This document shows, piece by piece, positions 418 through 57,503 of a DNA stretch of 64,000 nucleotides. Made by a program: the position numbers and the translations under genes. How positions within the stretch are numbered: position 1 is the stretch's first letter; each line of letters begins with the position of its first letter. The stretch lies in the sequence record MK250021.1; one strand, written 5' to 3'. Under the pieces are notes generated by a model, which searched no databases, had not been told where the DNA came from, and saw nothing but the letters and a program-made list of their open reading frames with translations.

Positions 418-654
418 TTAATATACAAATTGAATCTTTGATTCAGCCATATTTGTGATACGCCATGAGAACATAGTACCACTCATTTGCTCAGTTACCT
501 TGTGTTCACAATTTGTAACATTTGTAGCCTCAACAAGATGCACTTCCTTAATTTTCTTAGGCTTACCATTATCTGGATTTTCTCCATCAATAACAACAGT
601 ACACATATAGAACTTATTGCCTTCTGATGGTTGCATTACTTTCATGTCTTCCAT
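418..654 (-). CDS. DUF4494-like small protein
   Basis: NGKPKKIKEVHLVEATNVTNCEHKV resembles the Bacteroidetes DUF4494 pattern (NGxxKKVxExYLVDAxSxTEAE). Confidence 0.5.
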   Translation of the reverse strand: MEDMKVMQPSEGNKFYMCTVVIDGENPDNGKPKKIKEVHLVEATNVTNCEHKVTEQMSGTMFSWRITNMAESKIQFVY

Positions 655-730
655 AAATTAAACAATTAAATTTGATTTTTTACTTCTTGCTTATCCTTCT
701 TAGTTTTAGTTTTTAAATTAATTATTTTTA

Positions 731-850
731 AAAAACCTATGTTTCTTGTTTCATAGACACACTACTTTTTAGTATAGTTATTATTTATAACTTCTGTCAT
801 CCATAGTTAGTATCTCCACAAGCGTAAATTCGGTAAAACTCAACCCTATT
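731..850 (-). ncRNA. Orphan TnpB omegaRNA-like scaffold (no adjacent tnpB)
   Basis: Near-identical to the 3' UTRs of both tnpB genes (AATAGGGTTGAGTTTTACCGAATTTACGCTTGTGGAGATAC...TATGAAACAAGAAACATAGGTTTTT), but starts right after the stop of the 851-1165 gene. Confidence 0.7.
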
Positions 851-1165
851 TTAAACTATTAAATTTAATTTTTTCTCTTCTTGCTTATCATTTTTATTCT
901 TCATATTCTTTCTACTTTCAAAAAGTTTCTTATCATATGGACTTAATTCCCTACAATTAGCACATATAAAAACTTTCAATGGAACTTGTGTAGTTTCTGA
1001 ACCTTGACCAATAAGCATACCAGGAACTTTCTTAAAAATAATACCAGGTATAAAAACCTCACATCCACAATTTGGACATACTTCTGAAGGATAATCTAAC
1101 GGATTTACCGCTGGCATATTTGCATTAGTACCAGCGGCATTTCCAAATAGTTTGCTATTTTCCAT
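851..1165 (-). CDS. Zinc-ribbon protein
   Basis: CPNC...CANC pairs; TAATG-type stop/start overlap with upstream S1-like gene. Confidence 0.7.
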   Translation of the reverse strand: MENSKLFGNAAGTNANMPAVNPLDYPSEVCPNCGCEVFIPGIIFKKVPGMLIGQGSETTQVPLKVFICANCRELSPYDKKLFESRKNMKNKNDKQEEKKLNLIV

Positions 1166-6131: not shown

Positions 6132-6178
6132 AATCTTTATATTTAAATTGTTAATATTTATGTTTATTATTTACATTA

Positions 6179-6186
6179 CAAAGATA
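6179..6186 (-). promoter_or_regulatory. Bacteroidetes host-type (early) promoter -7 box TATCTTTG, representative copy
   Basis: Exact copies at 6179, 12027, 13360, 16228, 30694, 31016, 48266 (minus) and 40685, 44700 (plus), variant TATCTTCG at 51362; each just upstream of an operon start; matches TAnnTTTG. Confidence 0.8.
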
Positions 6187-6227
6187 CATAATATTTTCCT
6201 AAATAAAAAATATATTACCTAAAATTA

Positions 6228-6761
6228 TTAAGAATTTAAATAATTATGAAATGAACCATCATCAGAATCTCCAATAAGATTGTTCAATACATGCCAATAC
6301 TCAAGATAACGCTTTGCTTTCTCCATATCCTGTGTTTCTTTCTCCTTATGGTCAGATCTCCAAATATACTTAAATGAATTCAACTTACAGAAATCCATTG
6401 TTGCTTGTTTTCCAAATGTCTGAAGCATAGCTTCTATACATTGTAAGCCATTACCACCAGCGCCATAATGATTTGGATGTTCAACAACATTCAAATTCTG
6501 TGTACTAAAAATAGGATTTAATTTTGTCTTATGTAATTGTAAATGTGCAGGTTCATCCTTAAATACAATCTTCTCATAATTCAACGGTTCTCTATTCTAT
6601 TCAGCTACATTATCACTAATAGGTTCACCACATTTCTCGTCATTATCTGTTGCAACTTCATCGGTTCTATTAGAAACAAATACAATATCTTTATCATCCT
6701 TTGTACGTGTAGGTTCACCATATACAGGTTCCTATGTACGAGTTTCCTTATTATAACTCAT
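6228..6761 (-). CDS. DUF3310-family protein, 177 aa in code 15
   Basis: VEHPNHY...QCIEAM...FCKLNSFKYIWR...DMEKAKRYL; N-terminus extends through 2 TAG to MSYNKETRT. Confidence 0.75.
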
Positions 6762-11979: not shown

Positions 11980-12215
11980 ATTCTTTATATTTTTAATTGT
12001 TCAACTTAATTGTTTTATTAACAATACAAAGATACATGTTTTATTTCAAATAAAAAAATATTAGAAGAAAAAATTAAATATTTTCTCTTAAAAATTTATC
12101 GATAAGTTTTTTAACACTATTACATTTATATTGTGTTTCTACATAACTACCTGTCCAATCAGTATGAACATGAAAATTCTCAAGAAACCAGTTTGCAATC
12201 TTTTCTTTATCCATA

Positions 12216-13357
12216 TCAATAATCTTCTGCATCTCGTGAAACTCTCATATTCTTTAAATCATTAATGAGTTTTTCACACTCTTTTAACAATACATATATA
12301 GTAGAAATAATTATCACTATAATAAATAATAATATTCCTAATGCTATATAAAACCCTGAATCTTCATAATTAGAAATAAACTTAAAACATGTAATTATAT
12401 ATGTAAAAGTAAATGGTATTACTAAACATAAAATCCAATTTATTATATGTCTCCATACATGTTTCTCTATATATTCGTTTCTCTCTTTATGTGATTTAAA
12501 CCATTTATTTTCCATATTTCCTATTTCTTTTTTACATCATCAATAGTTAGAATACGTCTCTTTTTAATATAAAATTTCTTTATAGATGGAGATTCCTGTA
12601 TTTCTTCAAATAATGAACATGGACTAAACCAATTATGTACAGTCTTAGCATATTCCATTGCTGTCTCTTCTGAATCGCAAACTGCAGATAATTCACGATT
12701 ATATTCGTCACATGTACGATAAACTTCTACAACTTCTTTCATAATTATATGTAATTTAAAATTAATTATTCAAATGTATATCATTAATACATAAAGGGAT
12801 AAAAATATAAAATATATTTTCTATATATAATGATAAAATCAAATTCCATAAATTATCTATAGTTAACATATTATAATACCAAAATCCCAATATAGTTAGT
12901 ACGCTACCTATGATAGAACATAAAATAGTAAATTTATATATTTGTTTCATTCTTTAATTTTTCTACCTAAAATATTTTTTAACATCCATACCAACATATT
13001 AAATGCAACCAATAATTTATTTTCTGTATCATCAGTCTCTTCTGAATGAACTATATTATCACCTTTCATATTTTCAAGTTTCACCGAATAACTATCAATA
13101 ACCATATAATATTCTGTACTCATAGTCAAATCTTCAATACGACGGTATAAATCTTGAAGAGTATATGTATAATAACCTAATTTATACTTAACTAATTGTT
13201 CACAATAATCTTTGTGCATATTTACATTATATTGATTTTTACCAATATAAATTAATGAAGCATCTGAAATATCAAGTCCAAGCTTCACCAATATATCCAT
13301 ATTATCTTTTGATAATGTAATTGTATTCTCTTTCATATATATAATTTTTATTAACAA
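12216..13357 (-). CDS. Early operon of four small hypothetical/membrane proteins (13357-12947, 12950-12762, 12742-12521, 12515-12216)
   Basis: Tightly packed co-oriented ORFs after promoter 13360; two carry TM helices. Confidence 0.65.
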
Positions 13358-13450
13358 TACAAAGATACATATTTTATTTTAAATAAAAAAGAGATATAAC
13401 AAAATAATCTGTTATACCTCTTATAAAATATATCTTAAAATAATAAAAAA

Positions 13451-16180: not shown

Positions 16181-16418
16181 AATTCTTTATATTTTTAATT
16201 GTTTATATTCTTATTTTATTAACAATACAAAGATACACATTATTTTTGATATAAAAAAGAAAACATAAAGAAATATCAATTTTTATAGTAAAAACAATTA
16301 AAATTCTATAGAAATCTTATTAAATTTTATAATATTTTTTAAACAAGTATAGATAAGAAAAGTCTACCATGACTTACATCATAATAGACTTATAGTACAT
16401 CTTTAAAAATAATATCTG

Positions 16419-16514
16419 TGGATATAGATGGACTCGAACCACCATGTATCTGCCCTAGAATTATGATACAAACTAACATCATATTAGTCGCGTTTACCAT
16501 TTCGCCATATATCC
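16419..16514 (-). tRNA. Atypical class II tRNA-like gene (Leu-type body, apparent anticodon UGA)
   Basis: GGATATA/TATATCC acceptor, GCG/CGC D-stem with GG, ACTAA/TTAGT stem, loop TATGATG, long variable arm TGTATC/GATACA, T-loop TTCGAGT. Confidence 0.65.
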
Positions 16515-16520
16515 ATATAG

Positions 16521-16593
16521 CAGGCCTGATGAGATTCGAACTCACAACAACATGATTAAAATTCGTGTGCTCTACCAATTGAGCTACAGGCCC
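16521..16593 (-). tRNA. tRNA-Lys(UUU)
   Basis: GGGCCTG/CAGGCCT acceptor, GCTC/GAGC D-stem, loop ATTTTAA, T-loop TTCGAAT; one C-A mismatch in the anticodon stem. Confidence 0.9.
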
Positions 16594-25660: not shown

Positions 25661-27847
25661 TTATTCATTTCTATTTATATTATATTTATCTAAAAGATAA
25701 TTTGCAAAATCTTCTTTTTCCTATGTTTTATTATTAAATCTAAAAAAGAAATTAAGATTAAGACCTACTTTTCCACCTTGCAAATAATTAGTTGGCCAAA
25801 GTCTTACCATCTTATTCATTACATATTCCTCTATTGTCTTGAATCTATAATGATTTAACCTTGCATTTTCCCATGTACTATTATTTATTAAAATAGAATT
25901 CTATGTTAATTTACCGGCTGTAGTTACACAAACAACATCATGATTTCTTATCATACCATGTGGAGAATCAAAAGTTCCATTTTTTATACATGTCTTAACT
26001 ATAACTTTTGTATTAACTGAATGTCGATTTGTAATAGGTAAATAATCAGTAAATCTCTTTATTGAATAATTATTATCTTCGACCTTTAATATTTCTGAAT
26101 CTGTATATTGTCTCCAACAAACTCTTATTGTATTAATACCTCTGTCATTATACATATCTTGAGATAAAAATTCATGTATATCATTGCAATTTAATTCTAA
26201 AAATTCATCAATATCAAAATATGCGATCCAATCATATTCATCTTTATATGTATTATAACAATCTGTATATGATGGAATCTATGCTTCAAATTTTCCTCTC
26301 CAATCTTTTAATATTACATATCCAGAATCTATATAATCAGCAATAACATCTTCAAAATGTTCCCCGTCAATATCATTATTATCATATAAAACTATATTGT
26401 CAAATCCTATTGATTTATGATGTTCAACAAATTCTCTTATATAATTATTTTCCATTTTTCCTATACAGCATAATAAAACTTTTCCTGTATACCGTTTTAT
26501 CTCATTCTACATATTTAGATATTTTAATTTTATTGGACATACATCAACTAATTTCTATAAATCAATATTAAATGTTGAATTGTAATTTTCTTTCAATAAT
26601 AATAAATTATCTGTAGTTGTATCATCATTTATTAAATAAGGTTCATAATATGGTTTATTAATAGATAAAAAGAAATCTTCATATTTTAAATCTTGATCTA
26701 TACTCTCACCAATTGATACCCATATATTAGGAATTCTGAAAGTTTCTGAAATAATTAATCCGTGTAGACTTTCTGAAACTATAAAATCACATTCTCTAAT
26801 TTGCTTAATAATATCTTTCCATGATTTATATTTTTTAAAATTTATTATCTATACATTTTCATCATCTTTAAATTTAAATAATAATTCTGATTTTATATGT
26901 GAATGATGCGGTATAATTCCTAATTTATATTTTCTTAAAACATAAGGATTATAATAATATGGAATTAATAATGCAGGATCACCATAAATTTCAGGACATT
27001 CAATTCCAGATTCTATACATATTTCTCTTGTTTTTGGTCCACGAACTGCATGAACTTTATATGGCTTATTTTCTAATAATTTATATCTTAACATTCCTGA
27101 TCCCCACACTTCTGTGTATTCATTTATATACTTATCTATAAATATTGATCCAATCATTAAATAATTTGTTGTTAACTAATTATCATATTTTTTATGTTTC
27201 TTTCGTGTTATATTAGGTAAAAAAGAAAAATTTATATCATCACCAAAATTATTAACTCTTAAATTACCGTTTTTATATAAAAATACCCACCCATTTAAAT
27301 ATATTATATCATCATTATTTATGTCTTCAGTATAATCTACATCATTTAGGTTTGATACTAATGATACAGAAGAATTAGATTTTAAAATGTAACTAATTAT
27401 ATTATCTTTTACTTTACTTTCTTCCTTTGTTTTATCTTTAAACTATTTACTATTAATAATAACATTTTTATTTTTAATAATATCCTATTTCTCTTTAAGA
27501 ATTTCCTAAATTGGTTTTACTTTAGACTCAATAGTAGGTATCATGATATTGGAAACATAAGCATACGTTTCCTTATTTGTTTTTATATTGTTAATATTAA
27601 TTTTTGTATTATTTCCTTTATGTTCTTTTTCTTTATTATCATAATTAACAAATGTTTTCATATTAGGTTTCGTAACATTACCTAATATGTACTTATCAGG
27701 ATTATATGTACCTTGTAACTAATTTATATTATTAGTCACTGATGAGAATCCGTCCTAATTATAATAAACACCAGCATTCTAGGCGTAACTTCTATTTTTT
27801 GAAAAATATGCTTTATCTATCTTCTATACATTTTTAATTGGAAACAT
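25661..27847 (-). CDS. Polysaccharide pyruvyltransferase + GT2/GT92-like glycosyltransferase fusion, 728 aa in code 15
   Basis: NFGDDIN, AVRGPKT, YGDPALL, SLHGLII (pyruvyltransferase), then ENNYIREFVEHHKSIGFDNIVLYDNN...WIAYFDIDEFL...LNHYRFKT (GT); frame continuous through TAGs. Confidence 0.75.
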
Positions 27848-29267: not shown

Positions 29268-30989
29268 TTAAATACTCTTTGTCTTATTAATTACCATTGT
29301 AATAAAATCATGTCTCTCTACATAATCCTTACTCTGACAATCATGTTTTACCAACAGATATGCATCGATAACTTTCTCTATAAAATCATGATCGTATCGT
29401 TTTTCAAGTCCCTCTTCAAAACCTGTTTCATATCCATTATTATATTCTTCTTGCAAATCTTTTTCTGTCATAATTATATTACTGTTTTATTTTATTACCA
29501 AAATACAATAGGACTATCACTTTGATTAGTAATCAATAATCTTCTATTAGTTGGACAAGATGGATAATCACTCAATCGATGAACACCGCCTACCATCATT
29601 CTTCTAGAATCTGAACATCCATAATGTGGTTGACAAAAATCATAATGAATACGAATAAACTTAAAATCATCATTAACTTCTACTGATGTAATAGACAATG
29701 AATCAACATTAATATAATGAGAATTTTCAATATTATTATTCAAACTATTATTATGCATCTTAATCCATTCCATATCATTCTTAATAGCTGAAGTTAAATC
29801 AATACTCAAAAACACAGAATATGTATCAACCATCTCTGGAGATTCATGGTCTGCTTCTGTAAAGAAATCAAGAAATACTCGTTTATCGATTATATCACCT
29901 TTCTTATATTCATCACGCATTGTAGCTACATGATCAATAACTAGATCGCTCTTATTCTTTGATTTATTTGAGTCTCCATGTTCATCTACCCATTTGATAT
30001 ACATGCCTCCTCTATTCTTAGGATAAAAAACTTTTGTCATAATTTTTATTTTAATCAGTTATATATTTTGCTTTATAAGTTTTATAATTATTAATAATAT
30101 TAATCCATTCTTCTTTTGTAAGTCCAGTTATTTCACAACCTTTTTTATAATCAAACATATTAATTTCTCCAGACATTTGAAGATGATAATATGCATCGAA
30201 TTTCTCTTCTGTAATTTCTACTTTCATATATTAATTATATTATTTGTTATTATTAATCATATCAATAAGTTTACCGACATTATCATAAAGTGTTCCCAAC
30301 TCATAAAATGCCATAAATTGATTTGATACTTTATGATATGTAGGATTACATACATTTATATCAATGAACAGATTTTCACAAAGGTTTGAAATATACATTG
30401 ATTTCTTATCTTTCTTTTTCGATATTTTTTCAGCTAATGGTTTCAATCGAGAATTTGCAAACTTAATTACGTCATTATAATAATTTACAATGCCCTGTTC
30501 ATACTCATAATCTGATACATATACAGTATTCTTATTTAATGTAAGAACATAATAATCAGAACACATATCAGATGTTCGTGTTACATGTAATTTATTATCT
30601 GCATTTGCAATTACACACATGAATGAAAGAACCAATGTTATAAATATATGTTTCATTTTATATTATTTTAAATTATTGTTTTAATTAACAATACAAAGAT
30701 ACATATTTTATTTTGAATAAAAAAATTAATATGAAATTATTTTACTAATTTGTGAACAATATCCAAACCATTCTTTACCTTTATATATAACACAGAAATC
30801 TCCATTTATATTAAGAACTCGTTGACCAGCAGAATTAAATACTGCTATAATTTCGCAATCGACAAAACCTTTATCACCTCTATCTTCGTTCATTAAATGA
30901 ATATTAATAATAGTTCCAACACGAATATCTCGTATAGTGAAATGCTTTTTATCAATATCGTCTTTATTATTTTTATTAAACTTAATCAT
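29268..30989 (-). CDS. Four hypothetical proteins (30989-30726; 30656-30240 with signal peptide; 30040-29495; 29471-29268)
   Basis: Co-oriented; two preceded by TATCTTTG promoters. Confidence 0.6.
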
Positions 30990-31112
30990 ATATTATTTTA
31001 TTAATGTTTATATAACAAAGATACATATAATTTTATAAAAAAGAAAAAGAGATACTATAAAAATACAGTATCTCTTTAAATTAAATTATTAATTAAACTT
31101 TCTAAAAACTTA

Positions 31113-32156
31113 TTACTTTACAGTAACAATAGCAACACGACCAAAATCATCATCCATACCATGACCTGTAGCATCAGTTACCTTAACACCACGAGACTCA
31201 AGATACTTCTTAACTGCTGTTGCACGAGCATCAGACAATGCCTTATTATGCTTCTTAGCACTCTTAGGTTCCTGAGATGCATAAGCGTCTACAACTACAG
31301 TTGTTCCTTCAGGAATTGCATCAAGTACAGACTTACACTTTGCACTCAAATTTGAGCTATTAAACTTAAATGGTGCAACAAATACATTCTGTGCAAAACC
31401 ACTTGCATTTATAACAGGTTTCTCTACAATCTTCTCAATTACCTGTGGCTCACGAGACTCAAGTTCATTAATCTTTTTATTAAGAGCATCAATCTCTGCC
31501 TGATCATAAAGCTTTGCCTTTGCAAATGAACGTGTTCCATTTGAATTCTTGAAACGATAAACAACACCTGCAGTAATCTCAAAACTACCATTCTTCTTTA
31601 CAAGCTTGCCATTATCAATATCATTCCATACAACAGAAGGATTTACAACAATACCCCATGCACGCTCCTTACCAAGATTAAAATTAAACTCTGCACCAGC
31701 ACGATAAGTCATCCAGTTATTATGATCTGCACCATAACCTGCAGTCTGATGACCCCAACCAAGACCTGTATAAACAACAGGTTCAAAGAACTTACGTGTT
31801 CCATCAAACTTAAATACATTAGCAAGATTTACCTTACCATAACCACTTACATTTACATAATCAAATGCAGTGTATGTATTATAACTACCATGACCTGTTC
31901 CAATAAGTGTACGACCTTCAATACCAAATCCCAACCATGGTGTTACATACTTATCTGCACCAACTACAATAATAGGTGCCATTGCTGTATGACCACTATA
32001 GAAATTGTCAAATGATGTAAGAACACCACCCTGAAGTGTTACTGAAACATTATCAGTAAACTTACTAGAACCTGCATAATCATTCTGTACCTGTGCATTA
32101 ATTGTACCAATTGCAAATGTAAACATTGCAATCAACATAAAAATAAACTTCTTCAT
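31113..32156 (-). CDS. ompA: OmpA-family outer membrane protein
   Basis: Signal peptide MKKFIFMLIAMFTFAIGTINA, beta-barrel-like alternating strands, C-terminal HNKALSDARATAVKKYLESRG. Confidence 0.8.
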   Translation of the reverse strand: MKKFIFMLIAMFTFAIGTINAQVQNDYAGSSKFTDNVSVTLQGGVLTSFDNFYSGHTAMAPIIVVGADKYVTPWLGFGIEGRTLIGTGHGSYNTYTAFDYVNVSGYGKVNLANVFKFDGTRKFFEPVVYTGLGWGHQTAGYGADHNNWMTYRAGAEFNFNLGKERAWGIVVNPSVVWNDIDNGKLVKKNGSFEITAGVVYRFKNSNGTRSFAKAKLYDQAEIDALNKKINELESREPQVIEKIVEKPVINASGFAQNVFVAPFKFNSSNLSAKCKSVLDAIPEGTTVVVDAYASQEPKSAKKHNKALSDARATAVKKYLESRGVKVTDATGHGMDDDFGRVAIVTVK

Positions 32157-32318
32157 AGTTTTTCTTTTAATTTAAAATTTGTTATTAACTAAAAAATTAT
32201 TTGTTTAAAATATTTGATTTATTAAAAATCATTATCATAATAATATATAATAAACTTCTTAAAAAGTTTACATTTTATAAAAATAAACTTCTTCATAGTT
32301 TTAGTTTTTATTTATACT

Positions 32319-32416
32319 AAAAACCTATATTTCTTGTTTCATAAATACATTATATATTAAATTTATATATAATTCATATCTCCACAAGCTTAAATTCGGT
32401 AAAACTCAACCCTATT
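32319..32416 (-). ncRNA. TnpB omegaRNA-like scaffold (shortened internal stem)
   Basis: Conserved 5' GGGTTGAG...GCTTGTGGAG and 3' GAAACAAGAAATATAGGTTTTT blocks downstream of tnpB. Confidence 0.7.
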
Positions 32417-32431
32417 TAATATTTTAAATAA

Positions 32432-33565
32432 TTATAAATTAATTTGTCTTAATCCTTCTGATAAAATATTCAAAGAAGCATTATAATCTCTATCTATTAA
32501 AGATTTACAATGTGGACATATCCACTTGCGCTAACTTAGTTTTAAATCTTTATAAATATATCCACAATTATGACATGTCTTTGATGAAGGATAGAATCTA
32601 TCTATTATAACTAAATTTTTATTATACCTATTACACTTATATTCAAGTTGTCGTCTGAACTCAAATAAACTTAATTCCTATATGGACTTAGATAGTTTAT
32701 GATTAGACATCATACCATTTACATTTAAATCTTCAATACAGATAACTTGGTTCTCATTAACTAGTTTTGAAGTTATTTGATGTAAATAATTTAATCTCTA
32801 ATTCTTTATTTTCTCATGAACTTTTGCAATTTTAACTCTTACTTTATTTCTATTAATACTGTCTTTCTATTTCTTAAATAATTGCCTCTATAATTTCTTT
32901 AATTTATTTTCTTGATTTTTATAAAAATGCTTATTCTCATATCTATTTCCATTTGAATCAACAATAAAATCTTTAATTCCTAAATCTAATCCTATTACAT
33001 TATCTAACTTTTCTTTTTCTTTAATATTATAATCAATACATATTGATAGATAATATTTGTTTGTAGAAGTTTTAGTAAGAGTAACAAAATGAATTTTATC
33101 TTGATTATGATTTAAATATATTTCATCTTTTCTTGAACACTTAAATAATATATTTTTTAACTACTTTATTAAAGTTATTCTATTTCCTCTAATTTTTTTA
33201 TTTTTAAACTTAAACATTGAATTAGTAAATCTGCAAGATTGTTTAGCATCTTTTTTAGATTTGAATTTAGGATAATATGTATATGATTTTAAAAAATTAT
33301 CATATGCTTTAATTACATCTATCATTGATTGCTATAAACATGCATTATATACATCATTTAAAAAAGAATATTCATCTTGCTTCCTTAAAGAAACTAAATA
33401 TTTACCTAACTATGATAAAGAAACAGATTGCTTATATTGTTTATATATTAATTTTTTATAATCTAATAATTTATTATATATAAATCTACAACAACCTAAT
33501 TGTTTAGAAATAAATTCTTTCTAAGCAACATCAGGATATATTCTTATTTTAATAGATTTGATCAT
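32432..33565 (-). mobile_element. tnpB: TnpB RNA-guided endonuclease (IS200/IS605/IS607-type), 377 aa in code 15; no tnpA
   Basis: MIKSIKIRIYP...GCCRFIYN; RuvC GLDLG, IEDL, DRDYNAS; Zn finger CHNC/CPHC; open only with TAG=Q. Confidence 0.9.
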
Positions 33566-38006: not shown

Positions 38007-39116
38007 ATGAGAAAATATTTTGAAGTTCCTGATATTATAACTGATGATTTTATTATATAGAATTTTAAATTAAAGAATACAGAAAATGATATTAATCCTA
38101 GTAGGGCAAGTAAGATATTTTTAAATTAGTATCCAACTATTAAAGAATATATAGAAAATAGATATGTGGATTCAGAATCCACATATGAAACTTTTTATAG
38201 AATATTTCATCATATTGAACATAGACCTAAATGTAAGGCATGTGGTAAAGTTTTAGAATTTCATCATAACCATAAATTTAGAGAATATTGTTCATAGAAA
38301 TGTGTATAGAATTTTGAAGATGTTATATAGAAGAAATCAAAAACAAGAAAAAGAAAAGTAACAGAATATAAATATTTGGGAAAAGATTTTTATCAAGAAG
38401 TTAGGAAGAAAATAGAAGATACCTGTTTAAAAAGATATGGTACAAAATATCCTACGTAGTGTGATGAAATAAAAGAAAAAGTTAAGCAAACTAATATAAA
38501 AAGATTAGGTGTTCCATATACAGCTTAGAATAAAAAGTGTTTAGAAAAGATGAAGCAAACCTGTATAGAGAGATATGGAGTAGACCATAATTTTAAAATT
38601 CCAGGTATGAAGGAACATATTAAGGAAACTTGGATTGAAAAATACGGTTGCGAAAATCCTATGTAGAATAAAGATATATTATAGAAAAATTTTGATTCAA
38701 AGAAAAAACATAATTCATACAGATAGTCAAAATCAGAAGAATCATTACATGAATATCTTTGTAATAAATATGGAGCAAATGATATATTAAGATAGTATAA
38801 ATCTGATTTATATCCATATCATTGTGACTTTTATATTAAAAGTTTGGATTTGTATATTGAATTGCAAGGTTATTGGTCACATGGTTATCATCCATTTAAT
38901 CCTAATGATAAAAATGATATTGAACGTTTAAATGAATTAATGTTAAGAAAAGATAAAACAGGTTATTCACATGCTATTGATGTATGGACTGTTAGAGATG
39001 TCAATAAGAGAAATACGGCAAAAGAAAATAATTTAAATTATTTGGAACTATTTGCAGTTAAAAAAGAAGATTTAATTAATAAATTTGAAGAATACATAAA
39101 AAATAAAAAAATTTAA
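38007..39116 (+). CDS. Free-standing homing endonuclease (Zn finger, KYG repeats, C-terminal PD-(D/E)XK/Vsr-like domain), 369 aa in code 15
   Basis: CKACG...YCSQKC; TCLKRYG, TCIERYG, TWIEKYG repeats; SKSEE...CDFYIKSLDLYIELQGYWSHG. Confidence 0.75.
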
Positions 39117-45647: not shown

Positions 45648-45857
45648 TTAATTATAGAAAATATTTTTCATTTAAAAAATAATTTAGATAAATAATATAA
45701 GAAATAAGTTTAATAACTTTGGTAGGTTGGTTTAAACTATTTTTATAATTTGAATATAATATATAATTAAAGATATTTATAGATCGTTTATATTAATAAT
45801 TTGTATCAACCTACCAATTTTATACAAATTAAAATATAAACGATTTTTTATTATATT

Positions 45858-46991
45858 ATGTTAAAGTCTATTAAAATACGAATATATCCTGATAATGTTT
45901 AGAAAGAATTTATTTCTAAACAGTTAGGTTGTTGTAGACTTATATATAATAAATTATTGGATTATAAGAAGTCATAGTATGAGTAGAATAAACAATCTGT
46001 TTCTTTATCACAGTTAGGTAAATATTTAACTAATTTAAAGAAACTAAATGAATATTCTTTTTTAAATGATGTTTATTCTTAGTGTTTATAGCAATCTATA
46101 ATGGATATGATTAAAGCATATGATAATTTCTTTAAATTACATAATGGTTATCCTAAATTTAAATCAAAGAAAGATACTAAACAAACATGTAGATTTACAA
46201 ATACTATATTTAAATTTAAGAAAAAGAAAATTAATGGTAATAGGATAACATTAATTAAATAGTTATAGAATATATTATTTAAATGTTCAAAAAGAGATGA
46301 AATATATTTAAATCATAATCAGGATAAAATCCATTTTATTACTCTTACTAAAACATCTACTGAAAAATATTATCTATCTATTTGTATTGAGTATAATATT
46401 TATAAAAAAGAAAAGTTAGATACAGTAATAGGTCTTGATTTAGGTATTAAAGACTTTATAGTAGATTCTAATGGAAATAGATATGAGAATAAACATTTTT
46501 ATAAAAACCAAGAAAAGAAATTAAAGAAATTATAGAGGAAACTTTCTAAAAAGTAGAAAGGAAGTAATAATAGAAATAAAGTTAGAATTAAATTAGCTAA
46601 CGTTCATGAAAAAATAGCTAATCAAAGAAGCACATATTTACATCAAATTAGTTCAAAATTAGTTAACGAGAACCAAGTTATCTGTATTGAAGATTTAAAT
46701 GTAAATGGTATGATGTCTAATCATAAATTAGCTAAATCTATATAGGACTTAAGTTTCTATGAATTTAGACGTTAGTTAGAATATAAATGTAGATAGAATG
46801 GAAGACAATTAATGATTATAGATAGATTTTATCCTTCTTCTAAAACATGTCACAATTGTGGATATATTTATAAAAGTTTAAAATTAAATGAACGCGACTG
46901 GATATGTCCACATTGTAGATCTCTAATAGATAGAGATTATAATGCTTCATTAAATATTTTAACTGAAGGATTAAGACAAATTAATTTATAA
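45858..46991 (+). mobile_element. tnpB: TnpB RNA-guided endonuclease paralog, 377 aa in code 15; no tnpA
   Basis: Same length as and highly similar to 32432-33565; RuvC D/E/D residues intact. Confidence 0.9.
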
Positions 46992-47007: not shown

Positions 47008-47128
47008 AATAGGGTTGAGTTTACCCGAATTTACGCTTGCGGAGATACCAACTATGGATGAAAGAAATTACATTCATGTAATTATACTAAAAAGTAGTGT
47101 GTCTATGAAACAAGAAACACAGGTTTTT
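47008..47128 (+). ncRNA. TnpB omegaRNA-like scaffold
   Basis: AATAGGGTTGAGTTTACCCGAATTTACGCTTGCGGAG...GAAACAAGAAACACAGGTTTTT, homologous to the 731-850 and 32319-32416 copies. Confidence 0.7.
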
Positions 47129-47150
47129 AAAATTAATTGAAAACAAAACT

Positions 47151-48219: not shown

Positions 48220-48334
48220 AATGTTATGTAAATTAAAAAAATTATTTTTAGTATTTATCTTTTAACAAAGATACATAAAATTTTTTAAATAAAAAAGAGA
48301 TGTAATTTAATTATTACATCTCTTAAATTATTAA

Positions 48335-48637
48335 TTATCCATCATATCCGTATTTACCGAATACATGAACAATTTCACCGCTTTTAGTTGTATAAGATTT
48401 ATCATAAGATTCTAGATCATAATCACCGAAGTAATCATCATATGATTTATATCTCCAGCTATCTTCTGTAATATCTTCCTCTGATATAGAATCTTTTGAA
48501 ACTAATTTATTATGATCTCTATCAAGAACATATGTTCCATTTTTCCATCCATTATATTCATCATCTGATGCAAATGTCAATGAATGTGTAGAACTTGAGT
48601 TAGTTTCAAATACACTTTTTCTTACTTGAATTCTCAT
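48335..48637 (-). CDS. FETNSSSTH-motif protein 4
   Basis: MRIQVRKSVFETNSSSTHSL. Confidence 0.8.
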   Translation of the reverse strand: MRIQVRKSVFETNSSSTHSLTFASDDEYNGWKNGTYVLDRDHNKLVSKDSISEEDITEDSWRYKSYDDYFGDYDLESYDKSYTTKSGEIVHVFGKYGYDG

Positions 48638-48655
48638 TATATATTAATATATATT

Positions 48656-49219
48656 TTAATTACTCTTATAGTATTCCCATGATTTTCCAAAATTTGGACA
48701 ATCCAACTCTTCATCACTATTATCATTACCTGTTGATACATAACTATTATAATCAAACAAATAATTCATAAGTTTCTTTTCATCACTTATAATATCTGTA
48801 AGAAAATCACCTACTTCATTTCCATGATCTATATAACCACTATCTTCTTCATCATCATTATTCATAAATTTAATATAAGTATATTCACTACCATCATCAT
48901 ATTTATGAACTTTAACTTTCATATTAGCAGCATATGGAAATAGTGCTTTAATATTATGTTTTGCAAGAATATCTGTAATTGATTTAATTGCATTATTTAC
49001 TTTATCAATATTATTCCAATAACAACTTGTAATTGCTTCCCATAGATATTCTGCTTTAGTAGCAGTGTCAAAATGAATATCAAAATCCCATCCAAATTCG
49101 CCTTTACCAAATATTACTTTATCAGGAAATTCATTAATATCAGATTTCTTAATAATGGAAATAGAATGTGTTGAACTTGAATTTGTTTCAAATACACTAC
49201 GTCTAACTTGTACTTTCAT
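48656..49219 (-). CDS. FETNSSSTH-motif protein 3
   Basis: MKVQVRRSVFETNSSSTHSI. Confidence 0.8.
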   Translation of the reverse strand: MKVQVRRSVFETNSSSTHSISIIKKSDINEFPDKVIFGKGEFGWDFDIHFDTATKAEYLWEAITSCYWNNIDKVNNAIKSITDILAKHNIKALFPYAANMKVKVHKYDDGSEYTYIKFMNNDDEEDSGYIDHGNEVGDFLTDIISDEKKLMNYLFDYNSYVSTGNDNSDEELDCPNFGKSWEYYKSN

Positions 49220-49243
49220 TTTATTTTATAAAATTAATAATTA

Positions 49244-49909
49244 TTAAATAATATAAATCTTTGGTTTATAATAAGGTGCATAAGCTTCATCGGCATAAGT
49301 AATAGTATTATTATCATCCATAATATTCCAAAAATATTCATTGAATTTTTCTACTGTTAACCAACCACCATTTTCACCAATATTTTCAAAAAACTTTTTA
49401 TTTGTATCTGTATTTTTTGTAAATTCAACATATGAACCATATTCAAGTTGATTCTTAACATCTTGAATATCATACCCATGTTGTTTTGCAATCTTCTTTA
49501 TATACTCTACAAACTTCTTATATACTTCTGTATCTTCTAACCAATCATCATGATTATCCTCAAAATAATGGTTTCTATATTCAGCTCTATTATAATCTTC
49601 AATATAATATGCATTGTTATTTAATTCCATTGCAATATATTGAAGTTTAGCAACCCAATTATTAATGATATAATAAATATTAGTCATTTCATCACCATTT
49701 TCGAAATCAATACCACGAAGAATAAATGTATGTTCTATAATATAATCCTTTGGATTAAATATACCACAGTCCATATTATCCTTATATTGCTCAAAAATAG
49801 CTTTATATACAATATCTTTTACATCATCAATTGTTCCATGTGTAATTTGTAAAGAATGTGTTGAACTTGAGTTTGTTTCAAATACACCTCGTCTAATTTG
49901 TACTTTCAT
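49244..49909 (-). CDS. FETNSSSTH-motif protein 2
   Basis: MKVQIRRGVFETNSSSTHSL. Confidence 0.8.
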   Translation of the reverse strand: MKVQIRRGVFETNSSSTHSLQITHGTIDDVKDIVYKAIFEQYKDNMDCGIFNPKDYIIEHTFILRGIDFENGDEMTNIYYIINNWVAKLQYIAMELNNNAYYIEDYNRAEYRNHYFEDNHDDWLEDTEVYKKFVEYIKKIAKQHGYDIQDVKNQLEYGSYVEFTKNTDTNKKFFENIGENGGWLTVEKFNEYFWNIMDDNNTITYADEAYAPYYKPKIYII

Positions 49910-50409
49910 TAATCTGGTTCTATATAAATTTTTGTATGTTCATGATTTAAATCTTTATCGTAATTGAAATAATCCCTATCAAATATGTCAACTTTTGATT
50001 CATCATTAAAAATATATTCTAACAATAATTGCTCAAAGTCTTCATCTTTTTCATCAAATAGGTCATTAAATACATCTTCATACCCATAGCTATAATTATC
50101 ATATTCTCCCGTTTCTGAAATAAGGAATACACAATTAATATCATATTTAGATAATACTTTTTCAATGCGATATTTAGTAGACATAAAATGAGATAGATTA
50201 TCACCAAATGTCATATAGTCAAATAAGTTATCTAATCTATCTTGAAAATGATTACCTTTATCTCTTTCTCGCCAAGGTAAACCAAATTTAAGTGTAGTTC
50301 CTGCATATAATTTAAGAATTTTATCATCTACAGGTTTTGTACATATAGTTAATGTATGTGTTGAACTTGAATTAGTTTCAAATACACTATGCCTTATTTG
50401 AATTTTCAT
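49909..50409 (-). CDS. FETNSSSTH-motif protein 1
   Basis: MKIQIRHSVFETNSSSTHTL. Confidence 0.8.
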   Translation of the reverse strand: MKIQIRHSVFETNSSSTHTLTICTKPVDDKILKLYAGTTLKFGLPWRERDKGNHFQDRLDNLFDYMTFGDNLSHFMSTKYRIEKVLSKYDINCVFLISETGEYDNYSYGYEDVFNDLFDEKDEDFEQLLLEYIFNDESKVDIFDRDYFNYDKDLNHEHTKIYIEPD

Positions 50410-55229: not shown

Positions 55230-57503
55230 ATGGAAGATAACAATGTGAATAATATAATTTAGAATGATGAAAGTGAAGTTTCAATATAGTCTACTATAAG
55301 TTCAGCAGAAGGAAACTTGAATTTTTCACAAAATAGAGATGAAACTACGGGTTCTGGAGGAGGCGGAGGTTCATCTTTAAGTGGTAGTTCTACATCGGGA
55401 AATACTTCATCAAATTCAAGTGGTAGTGAATCATCTCAATTAGCGAGTGATAATTTAACACCTATATTATTGATATTAGGTGATAGTCCAGATCCTGAAC
55501 CAGATGTTGAGGAAGAACCTGTATTGTTGGAAGAAGATAATTTATAGCAATATACTATTGCACAAAATGGTTAGGAACCATATCACGTAATAATAGGTAA
55601 TTCTGGGTGTACTAATAAAGTTGATGAAGAGCATATTATAGTTATACAAGAAGGTGATAATATTATAAATAATAACAATAATATTATTGCAATAACTGCT
55701 AAAATAGATTAGAGTTGGTGTCATGTTGTTTTTGAACATCCTTTAAATTCACCATTATAGTTGGGAACTCCATATAAATTAAATTCTGATAATTTTAGTA
55801 GTGAAGATAATGAAAGAACTATTGTTCCTATGATAACATGTGAGCAAAATTCAGGTCCTCAAAGAACAGCAAATATTATATTTTGCATTGATGGTATAGA
55901 ATCAGATTTAAAAATAGGAATTACTCAAAATGCAGGTAATTATAGCGAAGAACCAGTTATTATTAAATATAAATCTGTTGAAAATGGTGTTATAAAGTAT
56001 GATATATTAGATAGTAACAAAACATATTATATTCATAAAAATAGTAACTATATATTTAGTGACAGAACAAATATGAGTGAGAACCCTTTATTATTTGGAT
56101 TAAGAGATAGTAATAATAATATAAATGGTAATTTAAAAAATTCAGATAGTTCTTATACATTTGAATCAGAACCAGAAGGGTATAATATGGTAATAACAGA
56201 TAATAATACTGCTACAACAACAAATACAGCATATCTCATGATTATAACACAGCCGCAAACGGTTGATATAAATCAAGTAATAACATTTAAATATAATAAT
56301 ATTGATTTTATAAAGGTTAAATATTCAGAATCATAGAAAGATTATAAAACATCTATAAAAATATGTAAATTAGAGAATTTATAGAATTATAAAGAAACAT
56401 CAGGATATAATATATATTTATTTAATTCTGATATAGGAACGACTGCAAATATAAAAACATCATTTACTGTATGTAGTACTGTAAAATTACATAGTTACGG
56501 CAGTAATGATGATATTAGTAATGGACGAATTGTTGCATGTATACGTCTAGATAAAAATACAGATAAAATTCCAGAAAATAATATAAGTGATTTAAATGAT
56601 GATAATGATGATATATGGCATTAGTTAAAACCTGTTGGTACCACATTAACATCAACATTATTTAAAGAAACATATAAAGATATATATTTATAGGATTGGA
56701 CAAATTTGAAAGTTTATAATTATTCTGCTGAAACAATAACTAACGTTGAAGAAAATTAGAATATATATGTATATATTGTAAAGGATTCTAAATATAATAA
56801 AGTTGGCGTTATTAATTTTGGCGGAACAATGGGACAAAATGGATATTTGGGTTTATTTAATTATTATTATACGTCTTTATAGGCTTGCACATATAATACA
56901 TATTGGATTTGCTGGTGTCATTGGTATGGAGATACAAATGACAGTTATTATGATAATTCTGGTGATACAATAACAGAAACAGAAACAATAAATGCAACAT
57001 TTAAAAATAAACAATTTGGAACATTTGATTTATACTTTGTTGCAATGAATGAACGAGGTGATGATAATGATATACATGATATTGATATTGCGAATAAAAT
57101 AATAAATTCTGGAAAAAATTATAAAAAGTATAATATTCCTTCAGGTACTTATAATTTTAATATGAATAAAATAATGGGTCTTGTATTTCATCCAGAAAAT
57201 TCGTCTATAAATGAAATTAAAACATTTAGAGAAATATATGATACATTATAGTTTAAAAATAATAATCATTATTATGATATAATAAGTGTATATAAAGATT
57301 ATTATGTTATAGATTTGAATAATGTTTGTAATGATATAAATGGAAATATCATTAATTTAAATGAATTTTATACAGATATGATGTATTAGATATATATTTT
57401 TACAAAAGTAAATGGTTCATTAATATATATAGGTATACTTTCTTATGGACATGTTAATACTAAACAAAATTGGGGAAATATTGCATGTTATAGCGAGGGT
57501 TAA
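55230..57503 (+). CDS. Large virion/adhesin-like protein with BACON-like segments, 757 aa in code 15
   Basis: Joins 55317, 55761 and 57045 fragments; Ser/Gly-rich linker; RTANIIF...IGITQ. Confidence 0.6.

What the first reader, a model, noticed from the sequence alone, without database searches (positions are those of the whole stretch)
658..895. Orphan omegaRNA followed by a decayed copy of the upstream gene's 3' end
Seen: the scaffold (850-731) starts right after the stop of the Zn-ribbon gene with no tnpB. Just past it (about 705-658) is a diverged duplicate of that gene's last ~45 nt: functional GATAAGCAAGAAGAGAAAAAATTAAATTTAATAGTTTAA vs relic GATAAGCAAGAAGTAAAAAATCAAATTTAATTGTTTAA. Inference: a cassette inserted inside the gene, supplied a replacement C-terminus and left the old end downstream; tnpB was then lost. 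The RNA may guide the two intact TnpBs in trans, giving transposase-free RNA-guided homing between co-infecting phages.
Basis: partly seen in the sequence, partly recalled or inferred. Interest (0 to 1): 0.72.

Follow-up and report, generated by a model that had tools for sequence, protein, structure and literature searches.

The report
Solo TnpB guide-RNA module in megaphage
A 142-base guide-RNA scaffold of a TnpB mobile element sits alone, without its nuclease gene, between two genes of a Lak megaphage, flanked by a working copy and a broken copy of the upstream gene's end; it is a real scar of an old insertion and repair, and nothing shows that it still acts.

Summary
The window is Prevotella phage Lak-B2. 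Window 850..709 (- strand) belongs to a structured RNA family with 13 copies in four Lak genomes. Twelve copies lie directly 3' of an intact TAG-recoded tnpB; this copy alone has none, yet it scores as well as the linked copies. It is flanked by a diverged direct repeat of the last 38-46 nt of the Zn-ribbon gene (889..851 working, 695..658 relic). At least five other Lak lineages carry the uninterrupted allele, with the gene end followed within 5-15 nt by the next gene. The relic keeps the ancestral bases, and the working copy has two derived changes. All Lak-B genomes and contigs examined carry the insertion. No allele with tnpB at this site was found. Two other Lak-B2 loci show "gene end, tnpB, scaffold, relic" without a left end, so the pattern recurs. 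Best reading: an element entered the gene's last codons, and recombination with an intact allele rebuilt the gene and removed the left end and tnpB. Trans-guiding by the genome's four TnpBs is possible but untested, and its guide matches no known empty allele. The phages hold no TnpA. Protein-less omegaRNA elements (PATEs) are already described. Interest is moderate.

The parts
851..1165 (-). Zn-ribbon gene (104 aa, two CxxC pairs), the host gene of the insertion
   Evidence: ORF. Homologues of 93-104 aa in other Lak lineages all end in (S/T)N(L/I)I(V/I/L); only Lak-B has L before NLIV.
851..889 (-). Working copy of the duplicated gene end (upstream repeat copy; homology may reach 896)
   Evidence: It carries two derived changes (TCA to TTA, ATT to ATA) relative to all other lineages.
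709..850 (-). Solo omegaRNA-like scaffold (right-end module of the Lak TnpB family)
   Evidence: Homology. Covariance model score 145 bits. It keeps 86 of 88 columns that are invariant in the tnpB-linked copies, and keeps all 19 consensus base pairs.
776..792 (-). Variable hairpin of the scaffold (6-bp stem)
   Evidence: Every copy has a hairpin here with its own stem sequence, so the changes are compensatory.
709..737 (-). Terminal hairpin of the scaffold (GGTTTTT...AAAAAC)
   Evidence: Present in the orphan and in the 326k, 233k, 218k and 169k copies, with differing inner pairs.
696..708 (-). Junction zone: TAAAACT, shared by the Lak-B2 copies, then AAGAAG. The boundary between scaffold and guide or target lies within it.
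   Evidence: The exact boundary cannot be fixed to better than about 7-10 nt.
658..695 (-). Relic of the Zn-ribbon gene end (downstream repeat copy), which is also the putative guide and the native lead-in to the next gene
   Evidence: It keeps the ancestral bases shared by all empty alleles and has a 1-nt loss that breaks the frame.
418..654 (-). Downstream gene (78 aa, DUF4494 in relatives). In empty alleles it starts 5-15 nt after the Zn-ribbon stop.
32432..33565 (-). tnpB copy 2 (9 in-frame TAG read as Q), with no left end
32297..32416 (-). Scaffold of copy 2. It is degenerate: the central conserved motifs are replaced.
   Evidence: It scores only 64 bits with the covariance model.
45858..46991 (+). 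tnpB copy 3 (12 in-frame TAG read as Q), with a conserved left end upstream
47008..47150 (+). Scaffold of copy 3, which abuts the ATG of the next gene (47151)
   Evidence: 157 bits.

Best explanation
Window 850..709 is the right-end guide-RNA (omegaRNA) module of a TnpB element family resident in Lak megaphages. Here it is left as a solo remnant. Inferred history: an element (left end, tnpB, scaffold) entered the last 15 or so codons of the Zn-ribbon gene in the ancestor of Lak-B, so that the rest of the gene became the sequence next to the scaffold, the guide position. A recombination with an intact allele in a co-replicating genome then joined the complete gene end to the start of the scaffold. 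That one step rebuilt the gene, removed the left end and tnpB, and left the old gene end downstream as a relic. The relic still gives the next gene its native lead-in. Shown: family membership, uniqueness of the orphan, the duplication, the empty alleles, the polarity of the two copies, and the recurrence of the layout. Inferred: the order of events and the type of recombination. The module lies inside an operon in the sense orientation, so it is probably transcribed, but a present function is not shown. I take it to be mainly a fixed scar.
For: Identity: 13 family copies exist in four Lak genomes, and 12 lie directly 3' of a full-length tnpB. The TnpBs pass NF040570 with 310 and 344 bits against a cut-off of 100. 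They match ISDra2 TnpB at E 2.5e-59 and have D/E/D and zinc-finger residues in place. The scaffold has a conserved fold with compensatory pairs, which the orphan keeps. Insertion: empty alleles occur in Lak-A1/A2/C1, in three IMG/VR contigs and six metagenome contigs of that allele type, in contigs of three sequencing runs, and in the P0004, P0005 and P0007 lineages. Polarity: the relic keeps the ancestral TCA and ATT, and the working copy is derived. Age: the insertion is present in all nine Lak-B genomes, four IMG/VR contigs and one ENA contig at 99% identity or more. Recurrence: Lak-B2 record positions 92k and 218k carry 'target, tnpB, scaffold, repeated target' with no left end. Their repeats span about 60-70 nt, and each beat all 2000 shuffles. 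Exchange between genomes: at 92k the two repeat copies differ at 5 of 54 positions, all at third codon positions and all synonymous. They therefore diverged as working genes in different lineages before being joined. Lak phages are reported to recombine extensively (PMC6784885, abstract). The phages hold no TnpA.
Against: No allele with tnpB at this site, and no interrupted allele, was found in any collection. The intermediate is therefore hypothetical. The microhomology at the orphan's left junction is only about 4-9 loosely matching bases in AT-rich sequence. The scaffold core is as well kept as in the linked copies (86 of 88 invariant columns). That could mean it is still used, or simply that too little time has passed: the relic itself has only 1-2 changes in 38 nt, so the two rates cannot be told apart.
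Confidence: 0.55

Rival explanations
1. One-step templated insertion. A break at the end of the Zn-ribbon gene was repaired by copying only the scaffold from a tnpB element elsewhere in the genome and then switching back to the gene through a short match. tnpB was never at this locus.
For: The native site reads ATGAAGAA(T/G). The flank of copy 2 reads ATGAAGAAG directly after the same 13-nt scaffold end, AAAAACTAAAACT. The first 22 nt of the orphan core are identical to copy 2. No allele with tnpB at this locus was found. Full elements with a left end also carry short target repeats of 10 nt and about 21 nt, which fits break repair better than TnpA transposition.
Against: The matches are short and lie in lysine-codon-rich, AT-rich sequence. 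The 92k and 218k loci show that the same layout arises with tnpB included. No direct trace of template switching is available.
Confidence: 0.25
2. The solo RNA is active: it is cut out of the operon transcript, loaded by one of the four paralogous TnpBs, and directs cleavage of uninterrupted alleles in co-infecting phages. The insertion is then copied in by repair, which amounts to transposase-free homing.
For: The scaffold is intact and scores like the linked copies. It is co-oriented inside an operon. Four intact TnpBs about 80% identical to each other sit beside scaffolds 79-87% identical to the orphan. No TnpA is present, so any spread must use another route. Protein-less omegaRNA elements served in trans are described (PMC10055086). 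The working gene copy mismatches the guide at three positions, two of them in the first six bases, as self-protection would require.
Against: The guide matches only its own relic in four Lak genomes and in IMG/VR. Every known empty allele differs from it by indels or many mismatches. The insertion is fixed in every Lak-B genome and contig examined, so no target population is known. No expression data exist. The TAM is unknown. The scaffold-guide boundary is uncertain by about 7 nt.
Confidence: 0.17
3. The retained RNA has been taken over for a cis role in the operon, for example as a TnpB-binding or processing site, or as a structured spacer that sets expression of the downstream DUF4494 gene.
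For: In all empty alleles the two genes are 5-15 nt apart. In Lak-B they are 196 nt apart and the arrangement is fixed. TnpB is known to process its own transcript at the scaffold (PMC10278001).
Against: No evidence of any kind bears on it. Fixation is equally explained by descent.
Confidence: 0.05
4. Assembly artefact or chance resemblance.
For: None.
Against: The same structure occurs in nine independent Lak-B genomes, four IMG/VR contigs and one ENA contig. Shuffle tests and the covariance model score are far beyond chance.
Confidence: 0.01

Closest known systems
IS200/IS605-family TnpB elements with a right-end omegaRNA (ISDra2 type)
   Same: TnpB of the same family (NF040570; ISDra2 structures at E 2.5e-59). 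A structured RNA begins just after the tnpB stop and ends at the junction with flanking DNA. The elements lie co-oriented just upstream of genes.
   Different: The phage genomes hold no TnpA. The tnpB genes are written in the phage's TAG=Q code. The elements are flanked by direct repeats of target of 10 to about 70 nt, which TnpA transposition does not produce. Three of the five Lak-B2 copies lack a left end, and the studied copy also lacks tnpB.
PATEs, protein-less IS200/IS605 derivatives that encode omegaRNAs (Meers et al. 2023, PMC10055086)
   Same: An omegaRNA-bearing unit with no protein gene that would need TnpB supplied in trans.
   Different: PATEs keep both transposon ends and can be moved by TnpA. 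This unit has only the right-end RNA module, no left end, and long target repeats. It is a remnant, not a mini-transposon.
Integrating elements that carry a copy of the 3' end of their target gene (for example islands and prophages in tRNA genes)
   Same: A working gene end on one side and a displaced copy of that end on the other side of the insert.
   Different: In those elements the duplicate is carried by the element and joined by a site-specific recombinase. Here both copies are the phage's own allele sequences, and no recombinase site is evident.
Solo LTRs and other solo-end remnants of mobile elements
   Same: One terminal module remains after recombination removes the coding body.
   Different: Solo LTRs arise by recombination between the element's own two ends. 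Here the recombination involved host-gene sequence.

Membership tests
TnpB omegaRNA (right-end guide RNA) | Sequence and secondary structure shared with the RNA region directly 3' of tnpB genes | tested here: met
   145 bits with the family model, all 19 consensus pairs kept, and both hairpins present.
TnpB omegaRNA (right-end guide RNA) | Encoded at or overlapping the 3' end of a tnpB gene | tested here: not met
   tblastn under code 15 finds no tnpB within 1.5 kb. The scaffold starts at the stop codon of an unrelated Zn-ribbon gene.
TnpB omegaRNA (right-end guide RNA) | The sequence just 3' of the scaffold is the flanking target, as seen in the empty site | tested here: inconclusive
   The sequence after the scaffold is the old gene end. 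A 7-nt TAAACT-type linker shared by the Lak-B2 copies, together with ambiguous alignment, leaves the boundary uncertain.
TnpB omegaRNA (right-end guide RNA) | Transcribed, processed and bound by TnpB; directs TAM-dependent cleavage | not testable with these tools
   No RNA run covers the locus. The TAM could not be derived from the few junctions.
IS200/IS605 transposon | Left and right ends both present | tested here: not met
   The conserved left end of about 220 nt seen at the 326k, 233k, 169k and 473k copies is absent here.
IS200/IS605 transposon | Insertion without target-site duplication | tested here: not met
   38-46-nt repeat here. A 10-nt repeat and a repeat of about 21 nt flank full elements.
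IS200/IS605 transposon | Y1 transposase TnpA available | tested here: not met
   NF033573 has no match over cut-off in Lak-B2, C1 or A1, while it is found in 5 of the 14 control genomes. A host-encoded TnpA was not examined.
PATE | Both transposon ends around a protein-less core | tested here: not met
   Only the right-end RNA module is present.
RNA-guided endonuclease TnpB (the two window genes) | Family model above cut-off, RuvC D/E/D and zinc finger intact | tested here: met
   The only in-frame stops are TAG, as in many other genes of the window.
Rfam RNA families | Match to any curated family | tested here: not met
   No hit at gathering thresholds in the window and none at E up to 1 in three loci.

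The most novel reading that the evidence does not exclude
Lak megaphage TnpB modules spread with no transposase at all. A TnpB-made break, or another break, is repaired by copying 'tnpB, scaffold, flank' or 'scaffold, flank' from another genome or locus through short matches, leaving target repeats of 10 to about 70 nt. The solo scaffold is still loaded by paralogous TnpBs and acts as a drive or exclusion guide against uninterrupted alleles of co-infecting relatives.
Probability: 0.12. Interest if true: 0.8.

Novelty: new variant of a known kind. Interest (0 to 1): 0.5.

Why it matters
TnpB elements are the ancestors of Cas12, and their known life cycle needs a TnpA transposase plus RNA-guided homing. 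This 550-kb phage lineage keeps four or five TnpB-type modules in its own genetic code with no TnpA. Each of the six insertions whose two flanks could be compared shows a direct repeat of target, and three have lost the left end. Together this is a natural series: full element, element without a left end, and solo guide RNA. The series points to recombination, rather than transposition, shaping the modules. It also shows how a phage can repair a gene hit by such an element. The solo scaffold is a ready test case for whether omegaRNAs can be served in trans in a virus.

Tried and rejected
- **Whole genome:** none is held for the window, so the Lak records were searched through locus handles instead.
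- **Rfam:** no family matches the scaffold.
- **Search for an intermediate allele** (tnpB at this site, or an interrupted gene): GenBank phages, IMG/VR, metagenome contigs, the protein index and contigs of four sequencing runs gave only the Lak-B form or empty forms.
- **Expression:** the only clear RNA run covers the neighbouring S1-domain gene of a relative and a 37-nt core of another scaffold family, not this locus.
- **Selection on the orphan:** 86 of 88 invariant columns are kept, but the relic has only 1-2 changes in 38 nt, so constraint cannot be separated from young age.
- **Guide targets:** there are none beyond its own relic. A pattern search for the third empty allele type found nothing in IMG/VR.
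- **TAM:** the bases 5' of the repeats at the few clean junctions do not agree, so no TAM is proposed.
- **Idea that the variable left-end stem is target-derived:** rejected, because the left end starts about 70 nt upstream of the stem.
- **First frame reading of the 92k relic:** it was wrong and was corrected by script.
- **Retrocopy origin (RNA-mediated):** considered because the units without a left end resemble transcripts, but no reverse transcriptase was sought and nothing supports it.

Full report
**Where the window lies.** The first 2400 bases are 100% identical to Prevotella phage Lak-B2 (MK250021.1, 549,839 bp). Window position p corresponds to record position 186,000 + p. Genes around the finding run on the - strand. 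Many ORFs of the window are open only if TAG is read as Q, as published for Lak phages (PMC6784885).

**The observation.**
- The Zn-ribbon ORF is 1165..851, with its stop at 853..851.
The next gene starts at 654.
- The two strings agree at 35 of 38 positions with one 1-nt gap. The best local alignment of the two flanks is 40 of 46 positions and beat all 2000 dinucleotide shuffles.
- The segment between them matches the sequence directly after two tnpB genes of the window. The 22-mer at 846..825 recurs exactly at 32412..32391 and with two mismatches at 47012..47033. A 25-mer at 755..731 recurs at both places too. No such match occurred in 100 shuffles.

**The TnpB family.**
- Read with TAG=Q, 33565..32432 (-) and 45858..46991 (+) give proteins of about 375 aa.
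- Both pass NCBIfam NF040570 (310 and 344 bits against a cut-off of 100) and match IS200/IS605 TnpB best.
- P0002 matches ISDra2 TnpB structures at E 2.5e-59. The RuvC D/E/D motifs and the CxxC..CxxC finger are in place.
- Lak-B2 has four such genes, Lak-C1 three and Lak-A1 four. All are interrupted only by TAG.
- No IS200/IS605 TnpA is present in the three genomes searched (Lak-B2, C1 and A1).
- The two Lak papers checked do not mention TnpB or transposases.

**The scaffold family.**
- BLAST and a covariance model built here find 13 copies in Lak-B2, C1, A1 and A2.
- Twelve copies sit directly 3' of a full-length tnpB. The window copy at 850..709 is the only one without.
- It scores 145 bits and the linked copies score 126-157 bits. 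The copy after tnpB 2 is degenerate and scores only 64 bits.
- The consensus fold has 19 pairs, four of them with compensatory changes. The orphan keeps them all, one as a G-U wobble.
- Of 88 columns invariant in five closely related linked copies, the orphan keeps 86.
- Each copy also has a variable hairpin with its own stem sequence and a terminal GGTTTTT..AAAAAC hairpin. The orphan has both.
- Rfam holds no matching family.

**Empty alleles and polarity.**
- Lak-A1, A2 and C1 have one gene end followed by 6 nt and the ATG of the next gene.
- The same holds in three IMG/VR contigs and six metagenome contigs of that allele type.
- It also holds in the lineages of P0004, P0005 and P0007, where the gap between the genes is 5-15 nt.
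- Contigs of three sequencing runs from other samples skip 681 to 894 with 10 letters between. They are closer to Lak-B, differing at about 6% of aligned bases in run X5, and so form a third empty type.
- All these alleles end with the codons TCA AAT TTA ATT. The relic has these bases and the working copy has TTA and ATA. At the protein level only Lak-B has L where all others have S or T.
- The downstream copy is therefore the old end. It has since lost one base, which breaks its frame.
- All nine Lak-B genomes, four IMG/VR contigs and one ENA contig carry the insertion at 99% identity or more. The event is therefore older than the sampled Lak-B radiation and younger than the split from the third empty lineage.

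**The layout recurs.**
- At Lak-B2 record position 92k, the order is: upstream gene end, 8 nt, tnpB, scaffold, then a copy of the last 54 nt or more of that gene. Lak-A1 has the single-copy empty site.
- At 218k (window copy 2), tnpB and its scaffold are flanked by a repeat of about 60-80 nt of intergenic DNA. An exact 26-nt copy of the start of the next gene also follows the scaffold. Lak-A and Lak-C are empty here.
- Both loci lack the conserved left end of about 220 nt that the other four element types carry.
- At 92k the two repeat copies differ at five of 54 positions. All five are at third codon positions and both copies translate to the same 17 residues. If changes fell evenly over the three codon positions, the chance of that is about 0.004.
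- The two 92k copies therefore diverged as working genes in different lineages and were later joined by recombination between genomes. Extensive recombination among Lak genomes is reported (PMC6784885, abstract).
- Full elements also carry repeats. A clean filled-versus-empty pair at 95-99% identity (Lak-A1 169k against Lak-C1) shows a 10-nt repeat. Lak-A1 473k against Lak-B2 shows a repeat of about 21 nt.
- TnpA-type transposition makes no such repeats (established knowledge of IS200/IS605, as summarised in PMC10055086).

**How it most likely came about (inference).**
- An element entered the last codons of the Zn-ribbon gene, so that the rest of the gene lay next to the scaffold.
- Recombination with an intact allele then joined the full gene end to a point inside the element. 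That point was the tnpB start at 92k and 218k, and the scaffold start here.
- Weak matches exist at the junctions. The native sequence after the stop codon resembles the scaffold start here, and resembles the end of the left end plus the tnpB start at 92k.
- The product has an intact gene, so it would be favoured.
- A one-step copy of the scaffold alone through short matches is the main rival. The native site and the flank of copy 2 share ATGAAGAA, and the two copies have the same 13-nt scaffold end.

**Present function.**
- The scaffold is in sense orientation between two closely linked genes. I read no terminator-like hairpin between them, and the first hairpin followed by a run of T lies after the downstream gene. 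Transcription of the scaffold is therefore likely but not shown.
- The 20-nt guide candidate matches only its own relic in four Lak genomes. The working gene end has three mismatches.
- In IMG/VR the 19-mer occurs only in the four Lak-B-type contigs.
- Known empty alleles differ from the guide by indels or many mismatches.
- No RNA run covers the locus.
- Trans use by the four TnpBs is thus possible in principle, as proposed for PATEs (PMC10055086), but it has no known target today.

**Comparison and verdict.** The module works like, and descends from, an IS200/IS605 omegaRNA. As a unit it fails the tests for a transposon or a PATE: it has no left end, no tnpB, and long target repeats. It is best filed as a solo right-end remnant. 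It belongs to a phage-resident TnpB population without TnpA that is shaped by recombination.

Noticed in passing
window 45700-45860 (+); L010, L007 and L011 upstream of tnpB: The conserved left end of the full elements has a 10-12-bp stem closing a loop of about 90 nt. The loop is nearly identical between copies. The stem arms differ at many positions in every copy but stay perfectly complementary (for example GGTAGGTTG/CAACCTACC and GGCGATTG/CAATCGCC). The arms lie inside the element.
   Followed up: partly
window 32275-32300 and 32135-32160 (-): An exact 26-nt copy of the start of the OmpA-like gene (AAAACT plus the first 20 nt of the ORF) sits directly after scaffold 2, about 140 nt upstream of the real start. 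Scaffold 2 itself has lost the central conserved motifs, although its tnpB is intact.
   Followed up: partly
L012 (Lak-C1 211k) against L066 (Lak-A1 empty); L016 (Lak-A1 292k): A second TnpB family (49% identity) shows the main insertion plus a separate in-frame 12-nt insertion, TTAACATACTGT, about 30 nt downstream in the next gene. The same 12-mer follows the Lak-A1 292k copy at a similar distance.
   Followed up: partly
window 12005-12075, 13338-13408, 16206-16276, 30672-30742, 30994-31064, 48244-48314, 6165-6246: A repeated intergenic motif of about 20 nt (on the - strand: ATGTATCTTTGTAT...) contains TAnnTTTG, the Bacteroidetes -7 promoter box. These are probably phage promoters.
   Followed up: no
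window 16419-16514 (-) and 16520-16593 (-): Two adjacent tRNA genes. One has an insert of about 25 nt, which looks like an intron; ARAGORN misses it and Rfam finds it. The other is tRNA-Lys(UUU). Intron-bearing tRNAs are reported for Lak phages (PMC6784885).
   Followed up: no
window-wide, for example 25661-27847, 55230-57503, 38007-39116: Many long ORFs need TAG=Q (up to 14 TAG per gene), while the operon around the finding has none. The tnpB genes carry 8-17 TAG, so they can be made only when TAG is being read through.
   Followed up: no
window 48544-50409 (-): Four neighbouring genes share a conserved stretch of about 94 nt at their 5' ends (65-72% identity to the reference copy), forming a tandem paralogue array.
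   Followed up: no
Lak-A1 record 296477-297577 (-): A fourth, more divergent TnpB in Lak-A1 (165 bits, 4 TAG) has no scaffold that the family model detects.
   Followed up: no
window 418-372 (-): A hairpin with a 9-bp stem followed by a run of T lies after the DUF4494 gene. It is the likely terminator of the S1-domain / Zn-ribbon / DUF4494 operon, which places the solo scaffold inside the transcript.
   Followed up: no
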